64,000 nt of DNA from Macrostomum lignano (lineage: Eukaryota): contig NIVC01000794.1 in NCBI GenBank assembly GCA_002269645.1, positions 104,008-168,007 of the forward strand. The letters are read 5' to 3'. Shown piece by piece: positions 1-57,802 of the stretch. How positions within the stretch are numbered: position 1 is the first letter of the stretch; each line of letters begins with the position of its first letter. Both the position numbers and the translations under genes were made by a program. Below the pieces are notes generated by a model that did not search any database, was not told the DNA's origin, and worked only from the letters and a program-made list of their open reading frames with translations.

Positions 1-424
1 GCCGGATTTCTACATGGTGGGTTTTCCGTGACTGGACTGTCTAGGGGGAAGTAGTTAGAATTTTTTATGTATGTGTATTTAATTTTATGTGTATTCGTAC
101 TCTGGCGGTGGTGGCACCATAGATCATGTATATTATCTATGGGTTGTGCCAACCACACAGTTACTCGAAATAAAGGCAGGGCGCATGCCAGTAAGAAGTT
201 TCTTGCTGGCGCTAACGCTAACCCACGTCTTACACTGTCGCCCAGCTTGACCAGGTCAAAGGAGTTCGTATCAAACCAATCGAGCATCGATTCTGCCCAA
301 CTCTGTATTACATGTGAGAATCAATGAGCGAAGAGCCTCAAGAAATGTATCATATTGATCATTTTGGAGCCACCGCACGCACCAACAGACTGAGGCATTA
401 TGCACAACTCGCACATATTGATAT

Positions 425-2262: not shown

Positions 2263-2991
2263 TACAGTAAATAAAGTATTACAGACCGAGAAGAACACGG
2301 AGGCCGTTTTCCAAGCAAATTCGTCAAAGCAAAGCAAGACATAAATCCTAAAATTTTGGTCTGTTGTCTAAAGGCTGGATTGATTTCATAAGGTGGTTCA
2401 ACCATTGATACAAAAGAGTTATTTTTAACTAGTGACGCGCGATGTTTATAAAACCAAAATCGTTGATGACGACTGACACTTGTCACTTGTCACTTGTCAT
2501 TTGTCGACTTGTCACTTGTAGCTTTTTATGGAATCGACCCCTGTTCGGAATCCAAGAGCTACCTGCGATCATACCATTGAATTAAGTAAGACTTAGCTTC
2601 TTTAATTGCTAGTTTATTTTCAGTGCAGCAAGCATAGCATATTGAAAACAGAACTAGTGCTAACCAGTTAGCACACCAGTTATCCAACCAACTGTTGCAT
2701 ATGAGCCGTGTAGATGTAATACGCTCGTATAATCTTTGTATGTTTTTCAGCGTCCTCGGCCTTTCTCTGCCATAGGAACCAAAAGAACAGACAGAGATCG
2801 TACTTAATCTACAGATATTGGAAGCGACTGGGAGTGGGAGTGAGGTATTCGTCAAAAGCGGGGATGTGGGGGCGCAGCCCCCAACATTTAGCCATAGACA
2901 TAAAAATTAAAGTAAAAGATTCGATGCTTAAATTAAAAGCGAGAAAGGAAAGGTTTGGGCAGCTAGAGAAAATCAGAGAGAACTGAGAATC

Positions 2992-4272
2992 ATGGAACAC
3001 GACTTGGAACTCGCTTTCGACTGGTTGAATGACATTGAATTGAGAGAAAACGAGGCTTCTAGATTTGCTTTACTGTCCGATAACGAGGTTGCTGAAAGGA
3101 TTTACGCTGCTGCGCCGGAATCGACACGCCGGAAGGAACGATGGGCACTAAAGCTATTTGACGACTGGTTTCAGGAGAGGCAAACCAAACTGCTTCATGG
3201 AGACGCCTGCGGTCTATCTGTGTTTAAGGAGCGTTCCGAATGGGGAAAATCGGATTGGAACTATTTACTAAAGACCTTCCTGTTCGAGGTTAGAAAAACT
3301 GACGGTACCAAGTATAACTCGAACAGTCTGAGAGATATGTTTAACATGTTGCAGCGATACGTACATTTTGGACTTGGCACTAACTGGAATCTATGGAAAG
3401 ATGATGATTTTCTGGGTGCTCGAAGAGCGCTTGATGCTGCGATGAAGGAGACGACCAAGGAGGGCAACGTTGCTGGAAAGTTTGCTTCTGACCCGATTCC
3501 GTTCGACATGGAAAAAGATCTATGGGTTAAGAAACTCCTTGGTACAGGCGATCCCAAGACTCTGGTGTATACGCTCGTGTTCTATATCGGAAAAAACTTC
3601 GCCATACGTGGTGGTACAGAGCTGCACAGTCTAAAGAGAGGCAAAGAGATTTGCTTGGAACTACACGATGGCCAGGAAATTTTGGTCTACAGAGAGGAGC
3701 GGAGCACGAAAACCAACAACGCTGGGATCAGAAGCAAGAATCGTCCTGTGAAGGTTTTCATGGCTTCGCACACCCCAGATCATGAGCGCTGCCTTCCGTG
3801 CATCTATAAAATCTACGACGGCTACCGACCGGAGCAATGTAAGCACGAGAACCTCTTTCTGACTTGGTTTCGAAGTGAGTCTGCCATTAAGAGCGGCAGA
3901 TGGTACCAGAATGAACCTATCGGCCGGCATACTCTCGACTCTATTGTGGCGAATATCACCAAGCCCGTGTCTACGGATGGTAAACTCTCAAACCAGTCTC
4001 TAAGGAAGACTTGTGCCAGCACGTTGCATCAGGCTGGACTGGCTAGGGACGATATAGCCCGCGTCACTGGACATTCGTCCAACGCAATTCAGACGTACAT
4101 ACGGCTAGACGTCCAGGACCATTCGCGTATGAGCTACGCTCTACACGCCGGAGGAGCCGTGGAGTCCAACGGGCGGACCAATGAGCAAGATGTCGTGTCT
4201 GAGGGTACTACCAAGAAGATGCGCATGACTGTCCACGGTGACACCAACACCGTAGAAATCATGTTCGAGTGA
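2992..4272 (+). CDS. YR1: Crypton-type (DUF3504-like) tyrosine recombinase, open reading frame intact
   Basis: 426-aa intronless ORF with FAIRGGTE (catalytic R), NQSLRKT (HxxR position with Q instead of H), VTGH and IQTY (nucleophile Y); flanked by CCATAGAC at 2892 and 4443. Confidence 0.85.
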   Translation: MEHDLELAFDWLNDIELRENEASRFALLSDNEVAERIYAAAPESTRRKERWALKLFDDWFQERQTKLLHGDACGLSVFKERSEWGKSDWNYLLKTFLFEVRKTDGTKYNSNSLRDMFNMLQRYVHFGLGTNWNLWKDDDFLGARRALDAAMKETTKEGNVAGKFASDPIPFDMEKDLWVKKLLGTGDPKTLVYTLVFYIGKNFAIRGGTELHSLKRGKEICLELHDGQEILVYREERSTKTNNAGIRSKNRPVKVFMASHTPDHERCLPCIYKIYDGYRPEQCKHENLFLTWFRSESAIKSGRWYQNEPIGRHTLDSIVANITKPVSTDGKLSNQSLRKTCASTLHQAGLARDDIARVTGHSSNAIQTYIRLDVQDHSRMSYALHAGGAVESNGRTNEQDVVSEGTTKKMRMTVHGDTNTVEIMFE

Positions 4273-4376
4273 ATCGGCAAGAATGAATCGGTCGTTACTG
4301 CTGTTGATAGTTTATACATCTAATGGACTAACTAACAAATTATAGTCGTTCTAAAATGTTCTCAGGCCTTGTTCTT

Positions 4377-4402
4377 AGGCCTGTTAACCGGTTAACAGGC
4401 CT
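4377..4402. repeat. Perfect 26-bp palindrome downstream of YR1
   Basis: AGGCCTGTTAACCGGTTAACAGGCCT is its own reverse complement. Confidence 0.95.
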
Positions 4403-4719
4403 CGTTTTGAGTTCTCAGGCTTCGTTTTTTAGTGAGGTTTGGCCATAGACTATCGTTCCACTAGAAAAGAAGGAATTTAGTGTGAACCGTCATATCTGTA
4501 GGTTAAGTATAAGTTCTTTCTGTTTCCGAACCGAGTTCTCAGCCAGGGGGTTGGACCAGAGAAGTGAAGAAAACGGAAAGAATATATTTCCCAATCGTTT
4601 GGTCGGTCCATATGAGCCGACTGTAGTACCGTGAGATGTCTATGGTCAAGACTGCTACTTAGTGGAATTTAAGACGAAAATTTAATTTTTCAAGCACATA
4701 CTTAAATCAATTGACAAGC

Positions 4720-5985
4720 ATGGAGACTTTCGATTTTGATCTCAGGATCGACTTTGAGCCCATTGACTTTGCGACAATCGAGGAAGTATTGGATGCTACG
4801 GGAGCGCATCCAAATTGTCCTTGTCGCTTCTTTGTCCAGCTATTTGCGGCCTTTCTTCTCAACAGTCGAAAAGGCTGATGGCTCTGCCTATAGCTGCAGT
4901 ACTCTCGTCTGCATGAGGGCCGCTATTCATCGGTTCATACTTGGTATTCGGCGCATGCCCATTATTGGTAACCCAGAGTTCGTTGATTTTGACAAGACGT
5001 TCAAGGCCGCTCTAACATTCTCTCTGAAACAACCAGTTTCTGTGGTTGATGGTGAGCGTGGATATCGCACAATTGAGAAGGACTACTTGGAGAAGCTTCA
5101 CGTCTATTTCGACAGGGCAAATCCAAAGATGCTTCAACAGGTGTTCTTTCTCATCGCTTTCCATTTTGGATTCAGAGGTCGAGAGTGGTTCCGATCTCTA
5201 AAAAAGGAGGACATCATCGTGAGGTACCGTGACGGAGAAGTGGGATGCATCGATCAAATAAAGGGTAAACATGAGAAGAATGTTTCAGCCAAGTGTGTCG
5301 ACACCAGAAAGGAGATCGGAATATTTCCAGTGAGTGATAAGGCCGTCTGTCCGGTCCAGGCAGTGCTACTTTACCTATGAAGCTGCCAGAGGAAAATTCA
5401 AGCCTCTTCCCAAAGCCACGAGCCAAGTGGAATGACGACGGTTGGTACTGCAAGAAGGAAGTCCTTGGCAAGAATAGCCTAGCTGAACTTATGAAAGTCA
5501 TCTCCACTGAGGCTGGCCTCTCGCGGCAGTATACCAACCATTATATCCGATCGACAACGGTCACCACTTTATGTGAACCAGGATTCCCGATGGAAAATAT
5601 TCCGGCTGTTTCCGGACACAAGAAGACAGAGAGCGTGGTTCGTTACACTAAGCGGATTTCCATTGATCATAAGCGTTCGCTCTCAACAGCAATGACTTCC
5701 AGCCTGCGTGGAATCGAAACGCATTTGGAAGTTATCCTGAAGAAGCGCGCCGCTATTGGACAGGTGACTGTTCCGTCTGTAATGCACTACCTCAGTGGTT
5801 CAGTCGACACCGTCTTCTGTTTTGAGCGACCATCAACGGGAGCCGACTATTGTGCTGGAGAGGAACGGGGCAAATTGCTCGATTTATCTGTAAGAATGGC
5901 GACGTCTCTTGTTAATCTGAAAGAACTGAACTTGACTCTATGTTTCATGTACTCTGTTCCATGTTTTTGTTTCCATAATCCATAG
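4720..5985 (+). pseudogene. YR2: Crypton-type tyrosine recombinase, frameshifted
   Basis: ATG at 4720; motifs FHFGFRGREW, TNHYIRST and VSGHKKTESVVRY lie in three frames (shifts near 4830 and 5377); AATAAA at 5987. Confidence 0.85.
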
Positions 5986-6067
5986 AAATAAAGACTTTCC
6001 GTGACAATATTTGCGTTCTCCGGGATTTTATTTGGTAATATTCAATAATATCCCGTAAAGTCTTTAT

Positions 6068-6366
6068 GTCTATGGTTTATACGAGATTACACATGCCTTT
6101 TTCGGGAGTTATTTTCATAAATCCCTCAAAAGGCATGTTTAATCTGATACATAAATAAATTGATGATTTTCCGAGCCGATAATTATATTAACTGCCCGGA
6201 ATTTGCGGGCAGTTATTGCAGTTTAAACCATAGACATATATGCTTCACTTATTTTGCATAAATTTGTGAAAGAAGAAACGAGAAGTATCAGATTAAACAT
6301 GCCTTTTGAGGGAGTTATTTGTATTTTTTTGTAGAAGGCATGTTTAATCTCGTATAAACCATAGAC
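6068..6366. mobile_element. MITE-like foldback unit bounded by GTCTATGG...CCATAGAC
   Basis: 6068-6150 pairs with about 6280-6366 (GTCTATGGTTTATACGAGATTA...CCCTCAAAAGGCATGTTTAATCTGATAC); central hairpin TAACTGCCCG/CGGGCAGTTA; no coding content. Confidence 0.75.
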
Positions 6367-6561
6367 TAGACTCCGGGATTATATCGGATAATATCCCGGA
6401 GTTGTAATATAATCCCGCAAAATACAAAAACAATTGTCTATGTCAAAATGCCAAGTGACTAAGAATCGGGGTCGAGGGGGTGCATAGCTCGCTGTGGGAG
6501 TGTTGGGGCGGAGCCCTCACATATAAGCAGCACTGAAAATAATTATCTATGGTCAAAACTG

Positions 6562-7506
6562 ATGTCTGTTTCTAAAAGGCCACGCGTCAGGAGACTGGGT
6601 CTGACTTTCATTTACCTGTTGAATTTGAGAGTATATCGAAAGGCTTTGCGATGCGGCGATCGACTTCTGAACCCACTCGTGGATTACTCTAGAGATTTTA
6701 TCGGCAACATCGAACCGAACATTCTACCGGCTGATTTCGTGGAGTCACGCGCTGGTGGAGATATTCGAGATCATGAGTGGCTGGCGGCTGAGATGGATAA
6801 ATATCAAGAAGATGTACAGCTACAAGACCTATACGGGATGGAGCTTTTGGAGGCCCCGTTAATCGAAAAGGACGGAGAAAATGGATCGATGGACGGCGGC
6901 ATGGAAGGTGTCAAACGTTTTGCTGTAGTCGACAGTTTTGCCGCTCTGAACAAGTCTGTCCGTCCGAAAGGCACCAACAATCGGAACAATTGGGCCCTGC
7001 GACTTTCCCAGGAATGGGTGAGCTCACGTGTCAGTGAGATAGGCACGAAACCCATCGTTGAGTTCAGCTGTGAGGAAATCAACACGATTTTTGGACGTTG
7101 CATCGACGAAGCGCGGAAGGTCAATGGTGAGCATTATCCTAGAGGGTCATTAGTATCGATAGCCGCAGGACTTAATGCGGTCATTTGAGAGGTCCAGCCG
7201 ACAGTAGATCTTTTTAAGTCGATGGAGCTACGGCCATTAAGAGACTCGTTAGACGCCGCGATGAAACTTTCAACTGCCTTCACTGGTACTTCACTGAACA
7301 CTAAGCCGGCTGGAATTCTCAGTGTTACTGACGAAGAGAAAATATGGCGATCAGGAGTTCTCGGCTTGGATAATCCGGACTGTTTGACCAAGACGCGCTT
7401 CTTTCTGAATGGGCTCCACTTCGCCCTACGTGGAGGTGAGGAGCATTCGAATCTGCTGTTTTCGCAGATAAGAATTGAAATTCGCGACAACGAAGAGTGT
7501 CTTGTT
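6562..7506 (+). pseudogene. YR3: DUF3504-type recombinase, 3'-truncated by an insertion
   Basis: Homologous to YR1 (NWALRL..EW, ARKVNGEHYP, LDAAMK, VLGLDNP, LHFALRGGEEH); stop at 7186-7188; similarity ends at the 8-bp TSD at 7499-7506. Confidence 0.8.
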
Positions 7507-8050
7507 CATGGATGAAGGAATAGAAAGGATCGCTCATCTGAAAACGAGTCTATGGCCAAAACCTACTAAAAATTGGGATATTCCCCCCCCCACGAATTTT
7601 ATTGGCTGCTGGAATTTAATATACCTTTTCAACTTCGGATTCGTCAAAAGTGAGTTCAAATTCGTCAGCGTATGCAAAACTATATGCCGCTCAAGGGGAA
7701 GAGAATGAGTGTCTAAGTCATTTTTAGAGAGTGACTTCGAATTCGTCTAAGTAAGTGAAATTCGTCAGTGCAAATACAGCCTGATCAGAAAGTGTTTGCT
7801 TTGTCCATGGTAAGAAAAGAAGATGTCTATGGTAAGTTTAAGTAAGAAAGTGAGTGAAGTTCGTCTGTGGAAAAGTAACCCAATTTCTTGAAATCTTCAT
7901 TTCATGCTTTGATTGTTGTCAGAGATGCCCTACATGACAACAAACAGCCAATGTAACGCACAAAGTCCCGTCAAGCCGACGACTGATTGCCTGCATTGTC
8001 ACAGCAGGAGCAGCAGGAAAATCTGCAACAAGCTTTTGCTGCATTTCTTA

Positions 8051-8419
8051 GGGGGCCGTAGCCCAGCGGTAGCGCAGCTGCTCTGGTGTGCCAGCGACCC
8101 AGGCTCGATTCCAAGTGCAGTCACATTAATTTGGGGCTGAATAGGAATCTCGGCTTGGCTCTGCTCGTGCGATTAACGGCCTTGAGAGCCAACCCCCCAA
8201 GGCGCAGTGAAGTGTGTGTACATGCCTAACGATAATATAAAGTTTGGGCCGCTGTACACTCCTGTGTGAGTGTGTGCCTGCGTACGTATCCGCGCGCTTG
8301 TATGCCTGCTCAGGGGAGTCGGCGGAATGGGCAGTAATGCCTCTCGCCGGTTGTGTGCCTATGTCGCTTAAAGTGCGCCAGGGTGCACACAACCCCCCTG
8401 CCTCTAATAAAAATAAAAT
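8051..8419 (+). mobile_element. tRNA-derived SINE inside the Tc1-like element
   Basis: GGGGCCGTAGCCCAGCGGTAG (A-box-like) and GGCTCGATTCC (B-box-like) head; ends in AATAAAAATAAAA. Confidence 0.6.
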
Positions 8420-8684
8420 GCTGCATTTCTTTGAGGGTCACAGTCGGCTTCTCTTCCACATACCTCGTCAACGCCCCGAGCATCTCCTCAGAAAACTTTA
8501 GTCTCACTGCACCTCCTCGCGCGTTAAGATCAATCCTACCCTCATCAACATATCTCCTGATGATGTCACTAGCAGTTGTCATCTTGATATCTAGTTCAAT
8601 TGCGAGTTGTCTCCAGTCTTGTCCTTGTTGAAAACATCGCACGAGTCTAGAGCGATCCACAGACGAAATTCTCATGTAGGGCAT
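8420..8684 (-). pseudogene. Tc1/IS630-type transposase N-terminal HTH fragment
   Basis: MPYMRISSVDRSRLVRCFQQGQDWRQLAIELDIKMTTASDIIRRYVDEGRIDLNARGGAVRLKF...PTVTLKEMQ is a paired-like HTH with the RGG linker; no DDE domain follows. Confidence 0.7.
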
Positions 8685-9639
8685 CTCTGACAACAATCAA
8701 AGCATGAAATGAAGATTTCAAGAAATTGGGTTACTTTTCCACAGACGAACTTCACTCACTTTCTTACTTAAACTTACCATAAAAATCTTCTTTTCTTACC
8801 ATGGATAAAGCAAACACTTTTTCTGATCAGGCTGTATTTGCACGGACGAATTTCACTTACTTAGACGAATTCGAAGTCACTTTCTCTAAAAATTTACCCT
8901 TGAGCGCTATATAGTTTTGCATACGTTGACGAATTTGAACTCACTTTTGACGAATCCGAAGTTGAAAAGGTATAATAGTCCCCCCCTAAGTTCTTACTGG
9001 CTGAAGCTTGTACGAGGGGGAAATTCCTAAGTCACGATTAGCATGCATACTATGTAGGCTGTAGTAGAATAAACATAGATAACCTTTTTTCTTGTTTTAA
9101 ACGCTAATTTCTTTCCCCTAAGCCGTCATGGCCCAGAGGAAGAAAGCAGTTAGAGATGTCTAGCCAACGTACATGCATCAAATAGCTCTGTTTTTGTTCT
9201 GTGTTAAGTTGTTTTCGTCTAAAGCTGGATAGCCAAGCGCTACTGCGCTGCTCAGAACAGCTCGTCTAAGATTGGTGACAGAAATGAGGACGGCAGCAAG
9301 GTTAGTTTTTTTTACTTTCCTATTAAGTCAAGCCAGCAGCTCTCCATTTGGCTATCGAGCATAAATACTAGTCCAAAGTTTACGCCAAGGCGAAATACTG
9401 AGCTGTGCGACGAATATTTTTCTCCAGACTCATGATCGTTGTTATCTCAAGGGAAAAAGAAAAAAACTTAACCCTGTCGCAATACCAGTGCAATACCCAG
9501 CTACGCCGCAGCTTCCAGCTTCAATCCCGCCTCAAGATGCTTTTTCCTCAAGTTCCTCACTTTTTTGCTAACTAGCCCCTCACTTCTTTAAAGTTCAATC
9601 GCTTTATGCTTAGTTGTCTTGTTTCTTAATTTTTGCAGT

Positions 9640-9947
9640 AATAATTTAATAATTGATTACACCTGCCCCAATTGGACCAGATGTGCAACCGACAGCTCAG
9701 TCGCAGCTATTCTGCGGCGCATCTGAAGGCTGCGTACGGCTGTTAAGTCTAAGGACTGATGGGGTCGCCACACACACCCTTAATTACCCCAGCTAATGCT
9801 GGCACCCATTTTACAGCTGGGTGAACTGAAGCAATGCAGAGTTAAGCGTCTTGCTCAAGGACACAAATTGTTCCAGTGGGATCGGGAATCGAAACCCCGA
9901 CCTTCAAGTCGTGAGTCCGACGCTCTGACCACTAGGCTACAACCCCC
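9640..9947 (-). mobile_element. tRNA-derived SINE with a CORE-like central domain
   Basis: Minus strand: GTAGCCTAGTGG (A box), GGTTTCGATTCCC (B box), then GTGTCCTTGAGCAAGACGCTTAAC...CAGCTGTAAAATGGG resembling the MIR/CORE consensus; short ATT-rich tail. Confidence 0.7.
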
Positions 9948-10639
9948 GTTAATTTTTGCAACAAATTGTTATTTGTTTCAATCACTGCATCCTTCAATTC
10001 CTCTACATAATCAGTCAAGTTTATACAAAATCAGTCTAAAATCAGTCTACTATATATACAAAAAATACAAACTGCTGGTCTATCAAGAGGCAAAATTTGT
10101 TTATCAGGCAAAAGAGCGCAAATGTAATGTCTGGCCATGTAACTTGTATGGCTTTAAAATAGTGCATTCTTTCCCTATGCGCGTTAATCCGTGACTTTGG
10201 AATTCCCCCCCCCCCGCGTACAAGCTTCAGCCAGTAAAAACTTAGGGGGGGGACTATTATTAAATTCCAGCAGCCAATAAAATTCATGGGGGGGGAATAT
10301 CCCAATTTTTAGTAGGTTTTGGCCATAGACTCGTTTTCAGATGAGCGATCCTTTCTATTCCTTCATCCATGGTCTTGTTATCGTAAGCTATCGTAAGATA
10401 TCGTAAGATAACAGCATAAGCTGTTATCGTTGCAATGATGGATTGACACTAACTATTGAGTGCTGTTAACGTCTATGCACTCGTGCGCTACGCATTGTAC
10501 GAACGCGAAATTATTCTCTCTCGTGGCCATAGACCCGTTATCTGCACGCTTTTCGGGTATCACCGATAGACATATATCTATATAACTTTTAAGAGCGTTT
10601 GAAGTTTAAGAAGAACCCAGAAATCACGCGATCTACAAC

Positions 10640-11453
10640 TTGACCATGGAGCTACCGACTAAGCTTGTCTACTATATAGACTACAAGAAACTGCCAGGAG
10701 AAGCCATTTCTGGAATGTCATCATCACAGATTGACATTCTCCTTCAACAGCAAACCGAGGAGCGGTTTATGGAAAAGCAAATGGACGAGCGTCTGGTCGA
10801 GCAACCGTCAAATGGAGATGGCGAGATTTTGTTGCTGCCCGAGGATATTGACCTGGATGACATGTTCGACTGCGTGCCCAGCGTTGAAGACCTCGAAAAA
10901 GCTATCAAAGACCTAGAAGTGTCGCGAGTAACAATACCAGACGACAGACGGATCAGTACGTCAAAAGGCTCTTGGCCTTCATGGAATCGAATCCACGAAC
11001 TCGAAGAAGAATTCAAACTGGTATTGCGCTTCGCAAGCGCTTGGTGTGAACACCCTAGCAACCATGATGACCCAGATATCGGAGGCTGCCAGTTTGAGTA
11101 AGCGCTACACGGCCCATTTTGTCCGTCCGACTGTCATCAAGGAGTTTTCTGATGCTGGTTACTCGAATGCCGATATCTGTAAAGTGGCTGGTCACAAACA
11201 GGTGAAAACAGTCGAACGGTACCTGCAATTCGGAAGTCGACACACATCCGAGATGCGGGCCATGTGCAGCGCACTGCATTCATCGCTGCATGGAGCTAAC
11301 TCATCCATGGGCGGCACAAATCGAATGGAGACGTCTATGCCAGCAGAGCGCGCTGTGGCCAACAGCGGCAACCATGCCGAGCTACGACAGGTCACCTTGA
11401 CACTCAACTTTCATGGAAACGTGAGTGGGTGCACCTTTAATTCGCCAAAATGA
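10640..11453 (+). pseudogene. YR4: internally deleted relative of YR6
   Basis: N-terminal part similar to YR6 (frameshifted), joined to ISEAASLSKRYTAHFVRPT...VAGHKQVKTVERYLQFGSR...SGCTF; the central region with the first catalytic Arg (RGRE) is missing. Confidence 0.85.
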
Positions 11454-11716
11454 CGGTACCTTTTTTACATCTACTTTAAAATGGACAATACTGCAAAAGT
11501 GACACAGGCCTCTCATACAGTTCTTTGCAGTACTGTTGTTTCGTTAAATTGTTACTTAAAATATACACACACGCCGACAAACCATGTTAAAGTTTAGCCA
11601 TCTAGACATAAATTATCTGCACGCTTTTTTATTATCAGCACGCTTTTTGTATAGATTGCCTATAGGATTTTACCATAGACATAGGCATTATCTGCACGCT
11701 TGAGCGTTGCACAATG

Positions 11717-12048
11717 GTAGATTAAGTCTATGGTTTCAGACTTGGATAATGATCACAGTATTACCAATTATATTTGGTAATACTAAAAAGCGTTAATCAA
11801 TTATATTAATTAAGTAATTACCAATTAACCATTAACCATTAACTGTATTCTAAAAAATTGTCTATGGTCCGATTACGAAGACACTGTAGCGTTACTTAAT
11901 GGCGTGGCTTAATGGCGTTACATAATGATCAACCGAAAACGCTAGTCTATATGATAATGCGATTATGTCTATGGTTCAGAATTAAATAATGATCAACCAC
12001 TTGTGACTGTGATCATTATCCAAGTCTGAAACCATAGACTTAATCTAC
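11717..12048. mobile_element. Second foldback unit built on the GTCTATGG/CCATAGAC site
   Basis: GTAGATTAAGTCTATGGTTTCAGACTTGGATAATGATCACAGT at 11717 is the reverse complement of about 12006-12048; two more GTCTATGG copies lie inside (11860, 11967). Confidence 0.75.
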
Positions 12049-12206
12049 TAGTGTCTTCGTACCATAGATATTGGCTCGGCAGTGAGCAGGGTCAAGGGAC
12101 CATAGAAAATTTTTAAGAATACAGTTCTCTAAAAGAAAAGCTCTACCATGAAGTCTGTTAGGAAGTTAAGAAATAGAAGCAAGAAGCGAGAGAAATCGAA
12201 TTAAAA

Positions 12207-12780
12207 ATGCCTCTTATCAACTGGAAAAATCTACCGGTCGACAGTTTAGACGGCATCTCGTCTACTGAACTAGATTTCTGAGTGAACTGAGCGCCGTGAA
12301 CCACAGTTCCGATGAAATTCTTGGAGATTTTATCGACTAACTGTCTAAAATCGAGACGGCTGATGAGGCCGCTGCGGTTTCTAGTGTCGAGCTTCCAGAA
12401 CTATCTGATTTACCCAGTGCGATGGATGTTGTCGAACTGGAATCACTGCCGAGCACTACACGAGAACACATGTTTCTGTATGGCAAAATGTTCGTGGAGT
12501 TTTTAAAGAAGGATGGTGCTGTGGATGTGAGCTGTTCGACGTTATCTCGCACGCAAGCGTGACAGAACCCTCAGGAAGGTTGCTACCGCTGTTAGTGACA
12601 ATTTGGCCCCACCAACCGAGGCGACTACGAGTGCAACCACTAGTGCAACAGTCACGCAGCAAGCTCAAGTTGACATGCAAAGTGTGCAACAGCCGATGTT
12701 TGCCAACTGCCTCTTCGATGGGTGCACGTTCAAGCTTTGCTATATCCTTGATCTGTTTCCTGTTAAAGTTCTTGTTGCTT
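12207..12780 (+). pseudogene. YR5: heavily deleted YR remnant (N-terminus plus C-terminal tail only)
   Basis: MPLINWKNLPVDSLDGISSTELD aligns with YR4 YYIDYKKLPGEAISGMSSSQID; DLPSAMDVVELESLPSTTREHMFLYGKMFVEFLK aligns with the YR6 N-terminus; tail MFANCLFDGCTF resembles the YR4/YR6 GCTF tail; no catalytic motifs; AATAAA at 12786. Confidence 0.65.
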
Positions 12781-13162
12781 AAATTAATAAAAACAGTGAA
12801 TTTCTCGCTCATAATCTATGGCAATTTATCGTGACTTAACAGCTTCATTAAAAAATGCATTAAAAAACGATAGTCTATATGATAATGTAAGATTACTACT
12901 AGGCTAACTCATGCGATAATAGTCTTGGCTCGAGTGCGCGAAGCGCACGAGTGCCATAGACTATTATCGCACTCGAAAGTATATCGGGCATTTTGTCCCA
13001 TGACTGAGCGTGCGTTGAAAAAATTCTTCGTCACAGCACTGTACTTTATTATCTGCACGCTTTTTGTTCCTGCAGCTAGGAGTTCCTACCATAGACATTT
13101 TCTTAGTGACCATAGACAATTTCTTGCTATGCACAAGCTTCTGATCGTGAGTTTGGCCCCAT

Positions 13163-14626
13163 ATGGATTCATTATTTCCTAACGGCATGAGAAGCGGCAT
13201 GACGGCCGGTAAGATCTCCCACCATTTGGAGTGGGCCGACGTTGAGAAGCTTGTGGACGAGCAGTTACGTCTCCAAGCAACTAGTGTGAACGACAACGAG
13301 GAGCTGAGCCGCCTATTCGACTCCATCCCTGATTTGAACGACGACTTGGCCTCGATCGACCTTGACGCATCAATCCGGGCGCTGGAGCAAGAGACCGATG
13401 TAAAATCGTCTAAGAAGCATGAGGCTCAATACGTCGCGAAATTTCGCGATTTCTTGGCCAAGTATCCGCACCTGCGCGTCGATTTGGACACCTCGCAACC
13501 TGAGGAGCTGAGCGTTGGCCTACGCTACTTTTACGGCACTCTTCGCAAGACTGATGACCAGCCGTATGCTCCTAGCAGCCTCGTGTGCATTCGCGCTGCC
13601 TTGTTCCGCTACCTGATGAAGAACCGGGGCATCAACATCATTTCCGATGGTCGGTTCTACTCTGCAAATCAAATGCTGAAGGCCGGTGGGCGTCTTTTCT
13701 TTGCCCGCGGTGGCCGCGTGGACCACTTCCAGGCCATGGAGCCATCGGACCTACAGAAACTGGGTGACTACTTCGAACGGAGCACTCACACTCGCCTTCT
13801 GCATGAGACGTACTACAACGTCGTCTTCTACTTCGGCACCCGTGGTCGAGAGTGGTTGAGGGATTTGCGGGTGGACAGCTTCGAGTTCGACAAGGCCCCC
13901 GACGGTCGCGAGATCGTTCGCCTTCGAGAGAAGCGGGTGAAGAATGTCGCCAGGGACTTGGGCCGTGCCGCTAGCGACAATGTCAAGGAGGCTGTGATGA
14001 CTGTGTCTCCTGTAAAGTGCCCGGTCGAGTGCCTCCGACTTTACCTCCTGAAGAGAAGTGCGTCAATTCCTAGCTCTTCATCTTGTGGCGAAAAGGCGTC
14101 CGATGACGTGGAGTTCTTCCTGAAGCCGAAGGTTAGTGGTTTCGAGAAGGGGATGTGGTTTTCGCCCAAGCAGCCTATTGGCGTTAATGGCTTTGCCGAG
14201 CTCTTCCCACGCATTTGCGAGGCAGCCAGCTTGAGCCGGCGCTACACTGCGCACTGCGTTCGGTCCACCATCATCAAGGAGCTCTCCGTGGCCGGCCATT
14301 CAGTATCCGACATTTGCAAGGTCACGGGGCACAAGGCCACGGCCTCTGTCGAGCGGTACCTTCGATTCGGGTCACGCCGCGTTGGCGAGATGCAGGACAT
14401 GTGCTCGTCGTTGAACACGGCGATGCACGCGAACCAGGTGGCCTGCGTCGATAAGGAGGTTTCGGCGCTTCTGTGCAAGGTCCCGCGACGGGCCGTGGCG
14501 AATACGGACGATCCTGTTGCTCGTGTGATCGCGGAGCCCCCAACCACCAATACTACTGGGCCTGTACCGCAGGTTGTATTTAATTTCAGTGGTCCCGTCA
14601 CCGGCTGCACGTTTGGACGCATCTAA
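13163..14626 (+). CDS. YR6: intact Crypton-type tyrosine recombinase
   Basis: 487-aa intronless ORF with a full catalytic set: FGTRGREW (R), TAHCVRST (HxxR), VTGH, VERY (Y); AATAAA at 14723; GCCATAGACT direct repeats at 12953 and 14867. Confidence 0.9.
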   Translation: MDSLFPNGMRSGMTAGKISHHLEWADVEKLVDEQLRLQATSVNDNEELSRLFDSIPDLNDDLASIDLDASIRALEQETDVKSSKKHEAQYVAKFRDFLAKYPHLRVDLDTSQPEELSVGLRYFYGTLRKTDDQPYAPSSLVCIRAALFRYLMKNRGINIISDGRFYSANQMLKAGGRLFFARGGRVDHFQAMEPSDLQKLGDYFERSTHTRLLHETYYNVVFYFGTRGREWLRDLRVDSFEFDKAPDGREIVRLREKRVKNVARDLGRAASDNVKEAVMTVSPVKCPVECLRLYLLKRSASIPSSSSCGEKASDDVEFFLKPKVSGFEKGMWFSPKQPIGVNGFAELFPRICEAASLSRRYTAHCVRSTIIKELSVAGHSVSDICKVTGHKATASVERYLRFGSRRVGEMQDMCSSLNTAMHANQVACVDKEVSALLCKVPRRAVANTDDPVARVIAEPPTTNTTGPVPQVVFNFSGPVTGCTFGRI

Positions 14627-14768
14627 GATCTTCGTCGACCTTTCTGCTGTCATCTGTTTTACTGCTGACTTTTTGTTTCTGTGCATCGGTGTTAAATTCT
14701 GCTGTGTTTTCCCCCTTTTTTTAATAAACGTTGCTTGCAAACTGCTGTTTTTTGTGGTGCTGTACGCT

Positions 14769-14845
14769 ATTATCTGCACGCTTTTTCATTATCTGCACGC
14801 TTTTTCATTATCTGCACGCTTTTTTCATTATCTGCACGCTTTTTT
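14769..14845 (+). repeat. Four tandem copies of ATTATCTGCACGCTTTT(T)C
   Basis: Direct reading; the same motif occurs at 10538, 11612, 11631, 11687, 13048 and 14882 (two of these are variants). Confidence 0.9.
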
Positions 14846-15759
14846 GGCTACGCCGCATAGGGTTGGGCCATAGACTGTAATATTAATGCACGCTTTTTGG
14901 ACCAAAAACGCACGCTCAGTCATGGGACAATAAGTATTATTCTACTTTTGTTCTGACGATAACTGTGCTCACCAGTTACATATTGTTACCGTTCAAGTTT
15001 TATCATATTGAATGTTTAATGACTATGGGCACAACCAACTGACAACGAAGATATAAACAGACAAATATAATCCCTGAAAACACATAGATTATTGTGTCCT
15101 ATACCATCCTGCATCTCTGAATATACTACCGGAAGGCATAAAATCTATGGTTTATAAGAGATAACGTTTATTAGTAAATAAGTATTAACATTAGACTTAG
15201 ATGATAAGGGGAGACAACTTTCGTCGTAGACAATACTGTAATGAGCGAGAATATTCTAGAAGGGAAACAACTAATGATAGAACTTATAGAACAGTTGGAG
15301 CATTCGCTCAGTTTTTTCACAGGGCCTAATGGCTGAAACTTGGGGAATTAAACGAAACCAGAAATAATTCGCTCTGGAAAGCAACTTTGTCGTAGGTTTT
15401 GTTGTAGGACACTTACTCGCACCGACCATACTAAAATTGAGGTGTTAGCACGAATTCAAATTAATAAGTAAGTCTATAGAATGCGGGAGGTCAGACTTGA
15501 ATGACGAAGCTCAAAATTGTTACTTAGACTTGCCTGTTTGATTTTCTATCAATTGCTCTATACTAGTAATAACTGACACGTCATTTCTGTGCACAGATGA
15601 TTTCTGTATTTGGTTACGCAAAGCCTGTGCACACACCATAGAAACATAAAACAGTTGGCTCCGTCACGAATGACTGAATCATAGCACACTTATGATGTCG
15701 ATTTTTTAAAGTTTCCTGCAACCAAACTTTGCTTAAGTAGTGAATTACTAAAACAAAAA

Positions 15760-16627: not shown

Positions 16628-17015
16628 GGGGGTGTTGCATAGAATCGACAAATCGAAGTTTACAAGTGACAAGTTGACAAATTACAAGTAAACCGTGAAG
16701 TCCGTTGCATAGACGCTTTACAAACGACAAGCATCTGACAAGTGACAAGTGACAAGTTACAAGTTACAAGTCCCGTTACAAGTGGTTTGTTGCATAGAAT
16801 GTATAACTTGACAAGTTTTTCTGCTATTCGCGAGTGACAAGTTGCGTAGTAAATTCTGACCCCGCGAGCTTACTTAAAACTTACAAGCTGTCAAAGTCTT
16901 TGGCCCAAGTTTGACTGACTCAGCGTTATGTTCTATGACGAGTCGTCCGATGAGGATTCCGACGCATCTGCGCCCGGCAATAAACGACCGCGTACATTCA
17001 AGGACAGGATCATGA
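16628..17015 (+). mobile_element. 5' end fragment of a second Harbinger-like element
   Basis: Preceded by CAG (CWG); GGGGGTGTTGCATAGAA start, ACAAGT(G/T) subterminal repeats like the 825-2540 element, then MFYDESSDEDSD...RPRTFKDR resembling a Harbinger transposase N-terminus; no 3' end found. Confidence 0.6.
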
Positions 17016-18241: not shown

Positions 18242-19385
18242 CCAGTCCGACTGTCACACAGATGGTCACTCCAACAACAAGTCCGACTGTCACACAGATG
18301 GTCACTCCAACAACAATTCCGACTGTCACACAGATGGTCACTCCGACAACAATTCCGACTGTCACACAGATGGTCACTCCGACAACAATTCCGACTGTCA
18401 CACAGATGGTCACTCCGACAACAATTCCGACTGTCACACAGATGGTCACTGCAACAACCAGTCCGACTGTCACACAGATGGTCACTCCAACAACCAGTCC
18501 GACTGTGACACAGATGGTCACTCCAACAACCAGTCCGACTGTCACACATATGGTTACTCCAACAACCAGTCCGACTGTCACACATATGGTTACTCCAACA
18601 ACCAGTCCGACTGCCACACATATGGTTACTCCAACAACCAGTCCGACTGTCACACATATGGTCACTCTAACAACCAGTCCAACTGTCACACAGATGGTCA
18701 CTCCGACAACAATTCCGACTGTGACACATATGGTCACTCCAACAACCAGTCCGACTGTCACACATATGGTTACTCCAACAACCAGTCCGACTGTCACACA
18801 TATGGTCACTCCAACAACCAGTCCGACTGTGACACAGATGGTCACTCCAACAACCAGTCCGACTGTCACACAGATGGTCACTCCATCAACCAGTCCGACT
18901 GTCACACATATGGTTACTCCAACAACCAGTCCGACTGTCACACATATGGTCACTCCAACAACAATTCCGACTGTCACACAGATGGTCACTCCGACAACAA
19001 TTCCGACTGTCACACAGATGGTCACTCCGACAACAATTCCGACTGTCACAGATGGTCACTCCAACAACAATTCCGACTGTCACACAGATGGTCACTCCGA
19101 CAACAATTCCGACTGTCACACAGATGGTCACTCCAACAACAATTCCGACTGTCACACAGATGGTCACTGCAACAACCAGTCCGACTGTCACACAGATGGT
19201 CACTCCAACAACAATTCCGACTGTCACACAGATGGTCACTCCAACAACCAGTCCGACTGTCACACATATGGTTACTCCAACAACCAGTCCGACTGTCACA
19301 CATATGGTCACTCCAACAACCAGTCTGACTGTCACACAGATGGTCACTCCAACAACCAGTCCGATTGTCACACAGATGGTCACAC
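18242..19385. repeat. 36-bp minisatellite, about 31 copies
   Basis: Unit CCAGTCCGACTGTCACACAGATGGTCACTCCAACAA with variants; one 2-bp deletion near 19050. Confidence 0.95.
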
Positions 19386-19997
19386 TAAAAGCAATCCTGT
19401 CACACGCAACAGGCACCGCAATAATCGCTGCCAACTCGCTCCACCACTGGCGGACCTCGAACAACCCTCAGCGGTCTTTGCTCAATGGCTGAGGCTTCAT
19501 AGCTAAATAAGTAAACAATGAAAACTGCAACCAGAAGCAGCAAATTTTGTTGCAGCATTTTTCTTGCTGCTCTCTGAAGTGCCAAGTTTCAAAGAATTCA
19601 ACAGAATTTTCTTGTCGCATTTTCAAGTTTATCGCACTGCCCCCAGCTGCTGCAGGGCGATGCAGCTCGATAGAGAAAAAAGCACTTTCTCGATGCCAAG
19701 CTCTTTCCCAAGATTAGGACTTCAACGACAGTACAAAAGGTGGTCTTTTGTACGATCCGACATGTGTATTTTATACTTTACAAAGGTGAAAGGTGACTCG
19801 TTGTGCCAGTGAGTGGGAAAGCAGTTGTTATAGCAATCATAAAAACGGACAAGTAAAAGCGCTCTCTCCGACTTGAAAGTAATTTATTGATTTCTTTACT
19901 TTCCCCGATGTTTCCCGATGTTTCCCGAGTCATCGATGAATTATCAATGTCGAATTGCAAGCTCGTCAAGGCAGGCAGCTGGTTGCTGAGGCCTCCG

Positions 19998-22900: not shown

Positions 22901-23847
22901 CCGGAGTGCTTCTCCAGGTATTTGCTGAGGTCCTGCGGCTGCATTCGTACAGTCGGGGTTGTGTTGTGTTGCTGCTTGCATTAATTTGAGATCGTCAACA
23001 GGGCAATAAAGTTATTAAACCCACTCACCACGTATTCGAACACGAAGGTCAAATTCATCTCCGTGTGTATGATGTCGTGCAGTGTGACTATGTTTGCGTG
23101 CTTTAAGCCTTTCAGCAGGGAGGCTGGAATAAAAAAAATCCCCATAGTTACTGAGACACTACTTGAGGCAGGCTCTAGCAAGTAGCAAATGCGGCGCGTT
23201 TTGCCTATTTTTTCTCACCTTCCCTGATGGCAGTGAACGGAGCGCCCTCCTCGCGTTGCAGTCGAATGTCTTTCAGAGCCACTATTGAGTTGTTCACTCT
23301 TGAATGCAGATGGGAGTGCAGATTACAATTATCGCTAACACATTACAAAGCTCCCGAGTTCGAGTCGGCGGCGCGGCCACTCTTGGATGGGGAATCATAC
23401 AAGAGAGGTCAAGGGGTCATCTGCCCCATCCCGTGGAAATAAGGGGAGGGTCACGTTTCCTGGAAAATCCACGCCTGCGGCGCTAAAATGGAGCTAAAAT
23501 ATTATGGTCAGTGGGGCTCGTGCCGCCCCAGTCACCAGCCAAGGCAAAGCTTTCAGCGGGCACCCACCGAGACACGCCTTTAAAGACGGTGGCGTAGCTG
23601 CCCTCGCCAAGCACCTCCAGCCGCTGGTACGAGTCCGACCTGCCGAATCCGCAGCACTCGCCGCCTCCGCAGTCAAGGGCGGACCTGGGTCGGCGGACGG
23701 CCGCAGTCTTCTGCTTCTGCGCGGCGGCATTGCTGCCTGAGGCAGCCTCGGGTGATGCCGGCTGAATGGTGACAGCTGACGCAGCTGCGGCTGCCACGCT
23801 GCCGGCTGAGCGGTGCCGGCGGAGCGGCTGGCCGAGGCGGGCGAAAG
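19998..23847 (-). CDS. CDK14: PFTAIRE cyclin-dependent kinase (CDK14/15, Eip63E-like), seven exons
   Basis: GT-AG, phase-consistent exons: 23847-23568 ([21 protein letters not shown]), 23298-23219 ([21 protein letters not shown]), 23123-23029 ([15 protein letters not shown]), 22938-22876, 21920-21582 ([25 protein letters not shown]), 21278-21068, 20071-19998 ([13 protein letters not shown]...TAA). Confidence 0.92.
20177..20504. repeat. 41-bp minisatellite, 8 copies (CDK14 last intron)
   Basis: Unit GCGTGTCTG(C/T)GTACTTTTGTCACAGTAGTGCAGAGGCACAA. Confidence 0.95.
20712..20895. repeat. About 16-bp GCACCTCTGTCACT repeat
   Basis: Direct reading. Confidence 0.85.
21360..21548. repeat. 10-bp (GTCAGGCCGG)n, about 19 copies, intronic
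   Basis: Direct reading. Confidence 0.95.
22002..22775. repeat. 29-bp minisatellite, about 26 copies, intronic
   Basis: Unit TAGATGCAG(C/T)AGGTCCCTGGGTGTGTCTA. Confidence 0.95.
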
Positions 23848-23989
23848 CTGCGGTGAATTGAAGAGTTGTACACTGGGATTCCCGGAATTTTCAGAGAGGA
23901 TGTTAGGGATTCCTAGGGAATCCATGAATTGTGGATTCTTAGCCTTCTAGGGAATTCCCGGGCGATTTTTGAGCGGGGGTTCCCTTGAT

Positions 23990-24818: not shown

Positions 24819-29699
<4,881 letters not shown>

Positions 29700-29702
<3 letters not shown>

Positions 29703-45226: not shown

Positions 45227-45540
<314 letters not shown>

Positions 45541-55229: not shown

Positions 55230-55254
55230 TTTTTTCACCCACAAAAAAAAATAT

Positions 55255-56540: not shown

Positions 56541-56570
56541 TTTTTAACTAAAAATAAAATAAAATAAGAA

Positions 56571-57785: not shown

Positions 57786-57802
57786 ATATCTATTTAAAAA
57801 AG

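What the first reader, a model, noticed from the sequence alone, without database searches (positions are those of the whole stretch)
2892..14930. Head-to-tail array of six Crypton-type recombinase cassettes punctuated by one shared site: candidate integron/shufflon-like system in an animal genome
Seen: six intronless YR units, all on +, each bracketed by same-strand CCATAGAC or a close variant (2892 YR1 4443 YR2 5980/6228/6359 YR3 ... 10527 YR4 11673; 12032-12100 YR5 12954-13110 YR6 14868). There are 19 exact copies of the 8-mer in about 12 kb against about 0.4 expected, none inside a YR ORF, and only about five in the other 52 kb by eye. Known: tyrosine recombinases integrate and excise circles at short core sites, Cryptons have short terminal direct repeats, and from memory TATGG termini were reported for CryptonS (needs checking). 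Inference: divergent YR elements have repeatedly integrated into a site that each integration regenerates, building an expandable and possibly rearranging cassette array. Exact element boundaries cannot be fixed from one sequence.
Basis: partly seen in the sequence, partly recalled or inferred. Interest (0 to 1): 0.92.

Follow-up and report, generated by a model that had tools for sequence, protein, structure and literature searches.

The report
Flatworm Crypton transposon cluster, shared motif
A 12-kb stretch of a flatworm genome (almost certainly Macrostomum lignano) holds six tyrosine-recombinase "Crypton" transposons, two intact and four decayed. All carry the same 8-base word near their ends, so this is a transposon nest with a probable recombinase-binding motif, not an integron- or shufflon-like system.

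Summary
The enrichment is real. CCATAGAC occurs 24 times in the window against 1.5 expected, 19 of them in 2892-14930 and none inside a YR reading frame. However, 7 of the 19 are on the minus strand and 3 lie in an unrelated nested transposon.

The six units are animal-type Crypton tyrosine recombinases (DUF3504/QRICH1 plus Phage_integrase). YR1 and YR6 are intact and keep the catalytic residues. YR2 is frameshifted, YR3 is truncated and split by a 2.9-kb TIR element, and YR4 and YR5 are internally deleted.

In a sister family of YR1, five ~99% identical M. lignano copies with unrelated flanks fix the ends. They show a 5-bp terminal direct repeat, TAGGT, and the motif lies inside the element near both ends. 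Three of the five insertion sites have no motif nearby.

The motif is conserved in position across three divergent Crypton lineages and in contigs from other samples. It is 27 times denser within 300 nt of YR genes than elsewhere.

Best reading: it is a subterminal cis-element, probably recombinase-binding, and new copies land preferentially beside resident ones. Four right ends in the window read TAGG-N4-6-CCATAGAC. The integron/shufflon analogy fails. The "regenerated shared site" idea survives only in weakened form.

The parts
2839..4438 (+). YR1 Crypton unit. ORF 2992-4272 is intact at 426 aa. Its putative ends are marked by an 8-bp direct repeat, AGTGAGGT, at 2839-2846 and 4431-4438. An internal motif lies at 2892.
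   Evidence: Pfam DUF3504 2.5e-19, Phage_integrase, QRICH1. Direct repeat found. Ends are inferred by analogy with the mapped sister family: 54% aa identity, ends TAGGT|ATACATTC and CTGTAGGT|. Catalytic R, K, R, H, Y are kept, with Q in place of the first His.
4439..5974 (+). YR2 unit, decayed. Motifs at 4443 (+) and 4638 (-). Coding 4720-5985 is read in at least two frames.
   Evidence: tblastn: YR6 residues 100-310 match 4784-5422 in one frame, and residues 314-484 match 5392-5850 in another. Best match is P0004 at 35%.
5975..6153 (.). Short palindromic motif-bearing module: CCATAGAA at 5980, GTCTATGG at 6068, followed by a hairpin. A 97% identical copy lies inverted at a second locus.
   Evidence: blastn: window 5975-6127 = L004 11820-11668, 97.4% over 153 nt. 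Inverted repeats I12 and I16. The shared segment starts 5 nt outside the motif.
6287..7506 (+). YR3-type Crypton, 5' part. It holds a conserved hairpin, motif 6359 (+), variants at 6436 and 6545 (-), and ORF start 6562. It is truncated.
   Evidence: 78% nt identity to L004 6817-5616, where the ORF is intact (463 aa, 5034-6425 minus). Hairpin with 2 compensatory pairs. The same upstream layout occurs in contigs L009-L012 from other samples.
7507..10371 (.). Unrelated TIR transposon inserted in YR3. It has an 8-bp target duplication, GTCTTGTT (7499-7506 and 10372-10379), 115-nt terminal inverted repeats and an HTH ORF at 8310-8696 (-). A second element is nested at about 8980-10251. It carries 3 of the 19 motifs.
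   Evidence: Inverted repeats I1-I4, I6, I8. Sequence read. HTH_23/HTH_32 hits. Homology to L004 stops exactly at 7506.
10523..11666 (+). YR4 unit, an internally deleted derivative of the YR6-type family. Motif at 10527, ORF remnants 10646-11453. The 3' end has 2 copies of ATTATCTGCACGCTTTTT, then TATAGGAT.
   Evidence: tblastn: residues 7-107 match 10655-10998 and residues 332-484 match 11001-11438; the middle is missing. Repeats D1/D2. Unit limits are inferred.
11667..13079 (+). Motif-rich inverted-repeat modules (11673-12126), then the YR5 remnant (about 12149-12780) and its 3' end (ATTATCTGCACGCTTTTT, then CTAGGAGT).
   Evidence: Eight exact motifs. Interleaved inverted repeats I5 and I14. 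Only weak, collinear protein similarity, E 0.03-0.07. 11628-11682 matches 13045-13098 at 77%.
13080..14860 (+). YR6 Crypton unit. ORF 13163-14626 is intact at 487 aa. Motifs at 13089 and 13110 lie upstream. Four copies of ATTATCTGCACGCTTTTT (14769-14844) and CATAGGGT lie at the 3' end. The next motif, at 14868, lies 4 nt beyond the inferred end.
   Evidence: Pfam hits. 97% aa identity to M. lignano A0A1I8GNC8. Catalytic R-K-H-R-H-Y intact. Tandem repeats. Unit limits are inferred from the TAGG-N4-6-motif pattern.
12993..14930 (.). A perfect 24-nt inverted repeat (12993-13016 and 14907-14930) brackets the YR6 unit. Its role is unresolved; it may be a palindromic host site.
   Evidence: I18. An analogous 24-nt pair flanks the YR1b copy in L004, at 9709-9732 and 11827-11850, and lies outside that element's mapped ends.
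14958..15155 (+). Fragment of a YR3-type 3' end. Homology ends 5 nt after the variant motif ATCTATGG (15143-15150).
   Evidence: Local alignment to L004 4985-4788, about 77%.

Best explanation
The region is a nest of at least six independently inserted Crypton DNA transposons from three or more divergent lineages, in a Macrostomum lignano-type genome. Two are potentially active and four are decayed or non-autonomous. Unrelated transposons are nested among them.

CCATAGAC (extended form TTTT-R-R-CCATAGAC-W) is a cis-element that all these lineages carry in their non-coding terminal regions, 1-3 copies 5' of the ORF and one 3' of it. It is most likely a binding site for the recombinase or an accessory factor that helps assemble the recombination complex, comparable to arm-type or subterminal sites. 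It is not the strand-exchange point. Strand exchange occurs at a short TAGGT-like core that ends up as a 5-bp terminal direct repeat.

Because resident copies offer ready-made binding sites, incoming circles tend to integrate next to them, often 4-6 nt 5' of a resident motif. This builds mostly head-to-tail clusters.

Shown: motif enrichment and conservation, recombinase identity, the ends and direct repeat of the sister family, and clustering.

Inferred: motif binding, circular intermediates, homing, and the exact ends of the units in this window.
For: Recombinase identity:
- Pfam DUF3504, QRICH1 and Phage_integrase hits.
- PDB profile hits to QRICH1, XerA, integrases, IntI4 and Cre.
- Invariant Arg, Lys, Arg, Gly and Tyr across the alignment; the two His positions are kept in YR6 and the YR3-type.
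- More than 650 animal homologues at E<1e-10.

Mobility and ends:
- At least 8 full-length copies of a 441-aa relative, grouped at 90% identity or more, lie on different M. lignano contigs.
- Five fetched copies are ~99% identical over about 1.8 kb and have unrelated flanks.
- Their common ends are TAGGT|ATACATTC... and ...CTGTAGGT|. TAGGT or a one-mismatch version flanks four copies, and GATGT flanks the fifth.

Motif is internal and conserved:
- In those copies the motifs sit 37-87 nt inside the left end (+) and 72 nt further in (-). A variant sits 71 nt before the right end.
- Motif positions are conserved between the window YR3, the L004 copy (78% nt) and contigs from other samples (67% aa), while the surrounding non-coding sequence diverges.
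- L001 (52% aa to YR6) has an inverted motif pair upstream of its ORF.
- Density is 4.26/kb within 300 nt of YR ORFs, 0 in 14.4 kb of ORF and 0.157/kb elsewhere.
- Motifs at both ends, and their retention in the deleted derivatives YR4 and YR5, fit cis-acting transposition sequences better than a promoter.

Clustering and homing:
- No other YR fragment occurs in 48 kb of flanks of L005-L008 or in window 17.5-64 kb. Six in 12 kb is therefore non-random.
- 2 of 5 YR1b insertions lie 57-100 nt from a pre-existing external motif. Background is roughly 1 motif per 15 kb.
- TAGG lies 4-6 nt 5' of the motif at the right ends of YR1, YR4, YR5 and YR6.
- Two homology breakpoints between loci fall 5 nt outside a motif, at window 5975 and 15155.
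Against: - No binding or recombination was measured, so the motif's function is inferred from position and conservation only.
- The ends of the units actually present in the window could not be mapped, because no second copy of YR1, YR2, YR4, YR5 or YR6 was retrievable. The unit limits given here rest on analogy.
- The AGTGAGGT repeat around YR1 is one of many chance 8-mer pairs in an untargeted search.
- TAGG upstream of the motif is seen in only 7 of 46 motif instances, against 7.4% background. It is significant only when position is taken into account, and that test was post hoc.
- The homing statistic rests on five insertions.
- YR1 and its active-looking sister family have Gln in place of the first catalytic His.
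- Motif-bearing satellites and the perfect 24-nt inverted repeat around YR6 are not explained.
Confidence: 0.6

Rival explanations
1. A composite site, TAGG-N4-6-CCATAGAC, is the shared attachment site of all these lineages. Each integration recombines a circle carrying that site with a resident one and regenerates it on both sides. Divergent elements therefore stack head-to-tail in one orientation, like tandem integrative elements at one bacterial att site.
For: - All six YR units and the 3' fragment at 14958-15155 are on +. The chance of that is about 0.02-0.03.
- The composite recurs at the right ends of YR1, YR4, YR5 and YR6, and in L004 at 6629-6653.
- In the YR6-type subarray, each junction has the same order: GCACGC repeats, TAGG, motif, GCACGC.
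- Two breakpoints lie 5 nt from a motif.
Against: - The only family with mapped ends recombines at TAGGT with no adjacent motif on either partner. It inserts at motif-free sites in 3 of 5 cases.
- Motifs occur on both strands and several times per unit.
- The L004 array has opposite orientations.
- YR4's left junction has no TAGG.
Confidence: 0.22
2. The motif is a promoter or transcription-factor site inherited by these elements, and the cluster is an ordinary repeat-rich graveyard.
For: - Motifs lie 16-280 nt upstream of each ATG.
- They are often next to TATA-like sequence, e.g. CCATAGACATATAAA in L001 and CCGATAGACATATATCTATATAA at 10563.
- The window is full of other transposons.
Against: - One motif is also conserved about 150-240 nt downstream of the stop codon.
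- Motifs are kept in non-coding modules and deleted derivatives.
- YR density in the cluster is far above that in about 95 kb of other M. lignano sequence examined.
- 2 of 5 insertions lie beside a resident motif.
Confidence: 0.12
3. It is an integron- or shufflon-like host system, or a tandemly duplicated family of domesticated DUF3504 genes that generates diversity by rearrangement.
For: - Interleaved inverted repeats at 11711-12126 could be footprints of inversions between inverted motifs.
- DUF3504 genes are known domesticated Cryptons (PMC3212892).
Against: - Four of six units are pseudogenes.
- Each unit has its own recombinase, and there are no cargo cassettes.
- Units are 21-44% identical, and the closest retrievable relatives of YR1 and YR3 lie at other loci.
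- Catalytic residues are retained, unlike in domesticated DUF3504 (PMC3212892).
- A sister family is present in at least 8 full-length copies at 90% identity or more on different contigs.
Confidence: 0.03

Closest known systems
Crypton DNA transposons, animal group (CryptonA-like; Kojima & Jurka 2011, PMC3212892)
   Same: - A single intronless ORF encodes a tyrosine recombinase related to DUF3504/QRICH1, with no second enzyme.
- Elements are about 1.8 kb, with no long terminal repeats.
- Autonomous copies coexist with internally deleted derivatives.
- Other transposons are nested inside copies.
   Different: - That paper found no terminal repeats in animal Cryptons. Here a sister family has a 5-bp terminal direct repeat (TAGGT), and all lineages share a subterminal 8-mer.
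- Clustering of divergent lineages into arrays was not found in the papers searched.
CryptonS / CryptonF of oomycetes, diatoms and fungi
   Same: - They have 4-6-bp terminal direct repeats, thought to be recombination substrates.
- Most CryptonS have TATGG termini. GTCTATGG contains TATGG.
   Different: - Here TATGG is not at the mapped termini; the terminal repeat is TAGGT.
- The proteins are of the animal DUF3504 type and have no C-terminal CryptonS or GCR1_C domain.
Vertebrate non-autonomous Cryptons with conserved termini (salmon Crypton-N1_SSa and Eulor5/6; PMC5753468)
   Same: Terminal non-coding sequence is conserved across very divergent Crypton lineages.
   Different: The sequences of those termini were not available here, so no comparison with CCATAGAC was possible.
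Tandem accretion of integrative elements at one att site, and arm-type sites of lambda-family integrases (prokaryotes; from general knowledge)
   Same: - Several recombinase-binding sites flank a short crossover core.
- Hybrid sites after integration can accept further elements, which gives same-orientation arrays.
   Different: This is a eukaryotic transposon, not tied to one chromosomal att site. It also inserts at motif-free sites. No binding data exist.
Integrons and shufflons
   Same: They share only a tyrosine recombinase and repeated short sites.
   Different: There is no single resident integrase with attI and a promoter, no promoterless cargo cassettes with attC, and no invertible segments inside a gene. 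Each unit is a selfish element with its own recombinase.

Membership tests
Crypton transposon | Encodes a tyrosine recombinase and no other transposition enzyme (no RT, no DDE transposase) | tested here: met
   The only ORFs in the units hit DUF3504, QRICH1 and Phage_integrase. The mapped 1.8-kb sister element holds just this ORF.
Crypton transposon | Catalytic residues of tyrosine recombinases retained (R...K...HxxR...H/W...Y) | tested here: met
   The alignment has invariant R, K, R, G and Y. YR6 and the YR3-type have both His. YR1 and YR1b have Q at the first His. The profile hits XerA, integrases, IntI4 and Cre over the C-terminal catalytic region.
Crypton transposon | Multiple copies with identical ends and unrelated flanks (mobility) | tested here: met
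   Met for the sister family of YR1 only: five ~99% identical copies with common ends and at least 8 full-length copies in the assembly. Not testable for the copies in the window itself.
Crypton transposon | No TIRs or LTRs; short (4-6 bp) terminal direct repeats | tested here: met
   The sister family has TAGGT or a one-mismatch version at both junctions in four copies and a two-mismatch version in the fifth, and no TIR. For window YR1, an 8-bp repeat AGTGAGGT lies at the analogous positions; this is an inference. The 24-nt inverted repeat around YR6 is unexplained.
Crypton transposon | Phylogenetic placement among named Crypton groups (A, I, F, S, V) | not testable with these tools
The DUF3504/QRICH1 signature and homologues in Lingula, fish and other animals point to the animal group.
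Integron | One integrase gene with adjacent attI and promoter, followed by promoterless cassettes each ending in a folded attC | tested here: not met
   Every unit has its own recombinase ORF or a remnant of one. There are no cargo genes.
Shufflon / invertible-segment system | A single recombinase inverts segments bounded by inverted sites within a target gene, producing alternative gene ends | tested here: not met
   There is no target gene, and inverted motif pairs lie in non-coding spacers. Interleaved inverted repeats at 11711-12126 are the only possible inversion footprint. No alternative arrangements were available to compare.
Domesticated DUF3504 gene (ZMYM/QRICH1/KCTD1 type) | Single-copy conserved host gene, catalytic tetrad mostly lost, fused to other domains | tested here: not met
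   The elements are multi-copy, catalytic residues are retained, there are no extra domains, and 4 of 6 local copies are decayed.

The most novel reading that the evidence does not exclude
Divergent Crypton lineages of Macrostomum share one compatible landing site (a TAGGT-like core 4-6 nt 5' of CCATAGAC). Their recombinases recognise it, and every integration regenerates it. Arrays therefore grow head-to-tail by accretion, and may rearrange through recombination between motif copies. This would be a eukaryotic counterpart of tandem integrative-element accretion. It would also be the first defined cis-site for animal Cryptons, and hence a source of animal-derived site-specific recombinase/site pairs.
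Probability: 0.22. Interest if true: 0.7.

Novelty: new member of a known kind. Interest (0 to 1): 0.4.

Why it matters
Cryptons are the least understood class of eukaryotic DNA transposons. No transposition has been reconstituted, and for animal Cryptons no terminal features were known (PMC3212892).

This locus and its relatives give three concrete handles:
- an apparently recent family with mapped ends and a 5-bp direct repeat;
- an 8-11-bp motif conserved across lineages and samples, which is a testable candidate recombinase-binding site;
- family-specific iterated motifs (ATTATCTGCACGCTTTTT and ATAATCCCGGAG).

Together these make the questions [quoted passage not shown] directly testable. 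The locus does not reveal a new kind of gene-shuffling system.

Tried and rejected
- **Exact look-up of window proteins.** Look-ups of YR6, YR1 and the 97% UniRef match found no contig. The ends of the window's own units could not be mapped, and the locus could not be compared between assemblies.
- **A classical recombinase site.** I searched for two inverted motifs around a 0-30-nt spacer. No tail-to-tail pair exists in any locus. The only head-to-head pairs are window 117-142 and L004 8936-8978.
- **The 2.9-kb block 7507-10371 as an inversion product of motif recombination.** Rejected, because it has an 8-bp target duplication and homology to the intact relative stops exactly at its edge.
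- **tRNA or other RNA gene as the array's target.** None found. The only hit is a weak tRNA-like match inside the nested element.
- **Untargeted search for terminal direct repeats.** It gives many chance 8-mers and cannot define unit ends on its own.
- **One YR3 element split by the YR4-YR6 block.** Short alignments at 10380-10445 are ambiguous, so this is left open.
- **Literature.** Searches for Cryptons in Macrostomum, Crypton arrays or Crypton terminal repeats after 2011 found nothing relevant in the held library.

Full report
**1. Observation**

CCATAGAC occurs 24 times on both strands of the 64-kb window, against 1.47 expected. No shuffle of 100 came near.

However, 12 are on + and 7 on -, so the claim of same-strand bracketing is only partly right.

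None lies inside a YR reading frame. Over 139 kb of M. lignano sequence examined here, the density is 4.26/kb within 300 nt of YR ORFs, zero in 14.4 kb of ORF and 0.157/kb elsewhere.

The exact 8-mer dominates over its one-mismatch variants. The flanks extend the consensus to T-rich-R-R-CCATAGAC-W.

**2. What the units are**

The organism is almost certainly Macrostomum lignano. YR6 is 97% identical to UniRef A0A1I8GNC8 of that species. A 54% relative of YR1 is annotated on M. lignano contigs.

YR1 (2992-4272) and YR6 (13163-14626) are intact. They hit DUF3504, QRICH1 and Phage_integrase. A profile of the family hits QRICH1, XerA, integrases, IntI4 and Cre in the PDB.

The Arg, Lys, Arg and Tyr positions and a Gly are invariant across the alignment. 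YR6 and the YR3-type keep both His, while YR1 and its sister family have Gln at the first His.

The state of the other four units:
- YR2 is read in two frames.
- YR3 matches an intact 463-aa relative only to about residue 271.
- YR4 keeps residues about 7-107 and 332-484 and lacks the middle.
- YR5 shows only weak, collinear similarity, E 0.03-0.07.

The units are 21-44% identical to each other. The closest relatives of YR1 and YR3 that I could retrieve lie at other loci. They are therefore separate insertions, not local duplicates.

The YR3-type protein has more than 650 homologues at E<1e-10 in many animals. This is the common animal Crypton lineage from which DUF3504 genes derive (PMC3212892).

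**3. Other material in the interval**

7507-10371 is an unrelated TIR element.
- It has 115-nt terminal inverted repeats and an 8-bp target duplication, GTCTTGTT.
- It carries an HTH ORF and a second element nested at about 8980-10251.
- Homology of YR3 to its relative stops exactly at 7506.
- It holds three of the 19 motifs.

Left of the array, about 830-2530 is a decayed Harbinger-like element (identification by eye).

**4. Mapping real element ends in a sister family**

The 441-aa relative of YR1 ("YR1b") exists in at least 8 full-length copies, grouped at 90% identity or more, on different M. lignano contigs. I fetched five.

They are ~99% identical from a common left end (GTATACATTCTCC...) to a common right end (...CTTTCTGTAGGTT), about 1.8 kb. 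Beyond these ends the flanks are unrelated.

Read with the junction shifted by the shared bases, the flanking pentamers are:

| Copy | Left / right |
|---|---|
| L006 | TAGGT / TACGT |
| L007 | TAGGT / TAGGT |
| L005 | TACGT / TAGGT |
| L008 | TAAGT / TAGGT |
| L004 | GATGT / TAGGT |

This is a Crypton-style 5-bp terminal direct repeat.

CCATAGAC is inside this element. One + copy lies 37-87 nt from the left end, and an inverted copy lies 72 nt further in, about 100 nt before the ATG. A variant, CCATAGAA, lies 71 nt before the right end.

Three of the five insertion sites have no motif within 900 nt. The other two (L004, L006) lie 57-100 nt from a pre-existing external motif. With roughly one motif per 15 kb of background, two in five is unlikely by chance, but n is small.

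For this family the crossover is therefore not in the 8-mer.

**5. The motif is a conserved cis-element**

L004 is a second array. It has 11 exact motifs in 6 kb around an intact YR3-type ORF (minus strand) and a YR1b copy (plus strand).

The window YR3 and the L004 copy are 78% identical in nucleotides. Contigs from other samples encode a 67% identical protein (L009-L012). All three share the same upstream order:
- a hairpin with two compensatory pairs;
- CTCRTATAAA-CCATAGAY;
- CTCCGGGATTAT palindromes;
- two inverted motifs before the ATG;
- one inverted motif about 150 nt after the stop codon.

L001 (52% aa to YR6) has an inverted motif pair upstream of its ORF.

Each lineage also has its own iterated motif:
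- ATTATCTGCACGCTTTTT in YR4, YR5 and YR6 and in L003;
- ATAATCCCGGAG in the YR3-type.

Copies at both ends, retention in the deleted derivatives and absence from coding sequence fit a transposition cis-element better than a promoter.

**6. Junctions in the window**

The right-hand ends of four units read TAGG-like, then 4-6 nt, then the motif:

| Unit | Junction sequence | Motif position |
|---|---|---|
| YR1 | AGTGAGGT-TTGG-CCATAGAC | 4443 |
| YR4 | TATAGGA-TTTTA-CCATAGAC | 11673 |
| YR5 | CTAGGAGT-TCCTA-CCATAGAC | 13089 |
| YR6 | CATAGGGT-TGGG-CCATAGAC | 14868 |

The same composite sits in the TIR of the nested element and at L004 6629-6653.

Given the mapped ...TAGGT right end of YR1b, these are probably Crypton right ends abutting a resident motif. 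YR1 also has AGTGAGGT at 2839-2846, the position expected for its left junction. In an untargeted search such 8-mer pairs are common, so this is supporting evidence only.

Two homology breakpoints between the window and L004 fall 5 nt outside a motif, at 5975 and 15155.

No further YR fragments occur in 48 kb of flanks of L005-L008 or in window 17.5-64 kb. Six in 12 kb is real clustering.

**7. Interpretation**

Most likely (0.6): this is a nest of Crypton transposons. Their shared subterminal motif binds the recombinase or an accessory factor. Strand exchange occurs at a TAGGT-like core, and incoming copies favour DNA that already carries motifs, which builds clusters.

It remains possible for the YR6-type subarray (0.22). 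It is contradicted by the only family with mapped ends and by the opposite orientations in L004.

A promoter-only role with a chance cluster is less likely (0.12). An integron, shufflon or host-gene reading is essentially excluded (0.03).

**8. Comparison with what is known**

These are Cryptons by every feature testable here.

Kojima and Jurka reported no terminal repeats in animal Cryptons, and TATGG termini in most CryptonS. A later paper notes conserved termini between salmon Cryptons and Eulor5/6.

I found no paper on Cryptons in Macrostomum or on Crypton arrays in the held library.

The finding is therefore a set of new Crypton families with a newly visible cis-motif and clustering behaviour. 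It is not a new kind of system.

**9. Limits**

- No second copy of the window's own units was retrievable, so their exact ends are inferred.
- No functional data exist.
- The perfect 24-nt inverted repeat around YR6, the interleaved inverted repeats at 11711-12126 and the motif-bearing satellites are unexplained.

Noticed in passing
window 12993-13016 / 14907-14930; L004 9709-9732 / 11827-11850: A perfect 24-nt inverted repeat brackets the YR6 unit. A 96% matching 24-nt pair brackets the YR1b copy in L004 and lies outside that element's mapped ends. This suggests insertion into palindromic host sequence or another element.
   Followed up: partly
window 11711-12126: Two inverted-repeat pairs are interleaved (A 11711-11759, B 11841-11889, A' 12006-12054, B' 12049-12126), and each arm holds a motif. 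Simple nested hairpins cannot give this order. It may be a footprint of inversion between inverted motifs.
   Followed up: partly
L005 9297-10348; L008 798-1422; window 22003-22775: Three unrelated satellites (83-, 31- and 29-bp units) each carry CCATAGAC or a one-mismatch version once per unit. That is unlikely by chance and is unexplained.
   Followed up: partly
L006 5587-5738 and 7573-7724: A 152-nt direct duplication (99%) flanks the YR1b copy. Each copy contains GTCTATGG, and the left one starts 6 nt after a CCATAGAC. It could be a pre-existing tandem repeat or a by-product of recombination.
   Followed up: partly
window 7507-10371: A TIR transposon with an 8-bp target duplication and termini CATGGATGAAGG..., which from memory look P- or hAT-like. 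It has long inverted arms, an HTH_23/HTH_32 ORF at 8310-8696 (-), an inner element at about 8980-10251 with 41-nt TIRs, and a weak tRNA-like Rfam hit at 9877-9946 (-). Part of its interior is also present in the L004 array (7898-8551, 80%).
   Followed up: partly
window ~830-2530 and 16640-16860: A decayed Harbinger/PIF-like element, identified by eye from the read sequence, with subterminal (ACAAGTG)n repeats. Related repeats recur at 16.6-16.9 kb, so the Crypton array lies between two such repeat blocks.
   Followed up: no
window 6064-6370; L004 6722-6830 and 11598-11731; L009 30-118: A conserved hairpin of about 70 nt lies immediately 5' of CTCRTATAAA-CCATAGAY in YR3-type elements. It shows two compensatory base-pair changes between samples.
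   Followed up: yes
window 54366-62614: A cluster of ORFs on both strands with almost no Pfam hits. One has a weak Pox_A32-like packaging-ATPase match (58425-58877). It may be a Polinton/Maverick- or virus-like insertion.
   Followed up: partly
window 25835-29095 (-), 29670-32623 (+), 46531-47844 (-): An LTR-retrotransposon pol ORF (protease, RT, RNase H, integrase), a LINE-like ORF region with no Pfam hit for the part tested, and a bHLH-domain ORF that runs into a coding minisatellite.
   Followed up: partly
window 18242-24381, 38873-39973, 45132-48688: Many long minisatellites with open frames in several phases and strong strand-composition skew. The window outside the array is highly repetitive.
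   Followed up: no
window YR1 residue ~334 (NQSLR); P0011 likewise: YR1 and the multi-copy sister family have Gln where other tyrosine recombinases have the first catalytic His (HxxR). Even so, the sister family looks recently mobile.
   Followed up: partly
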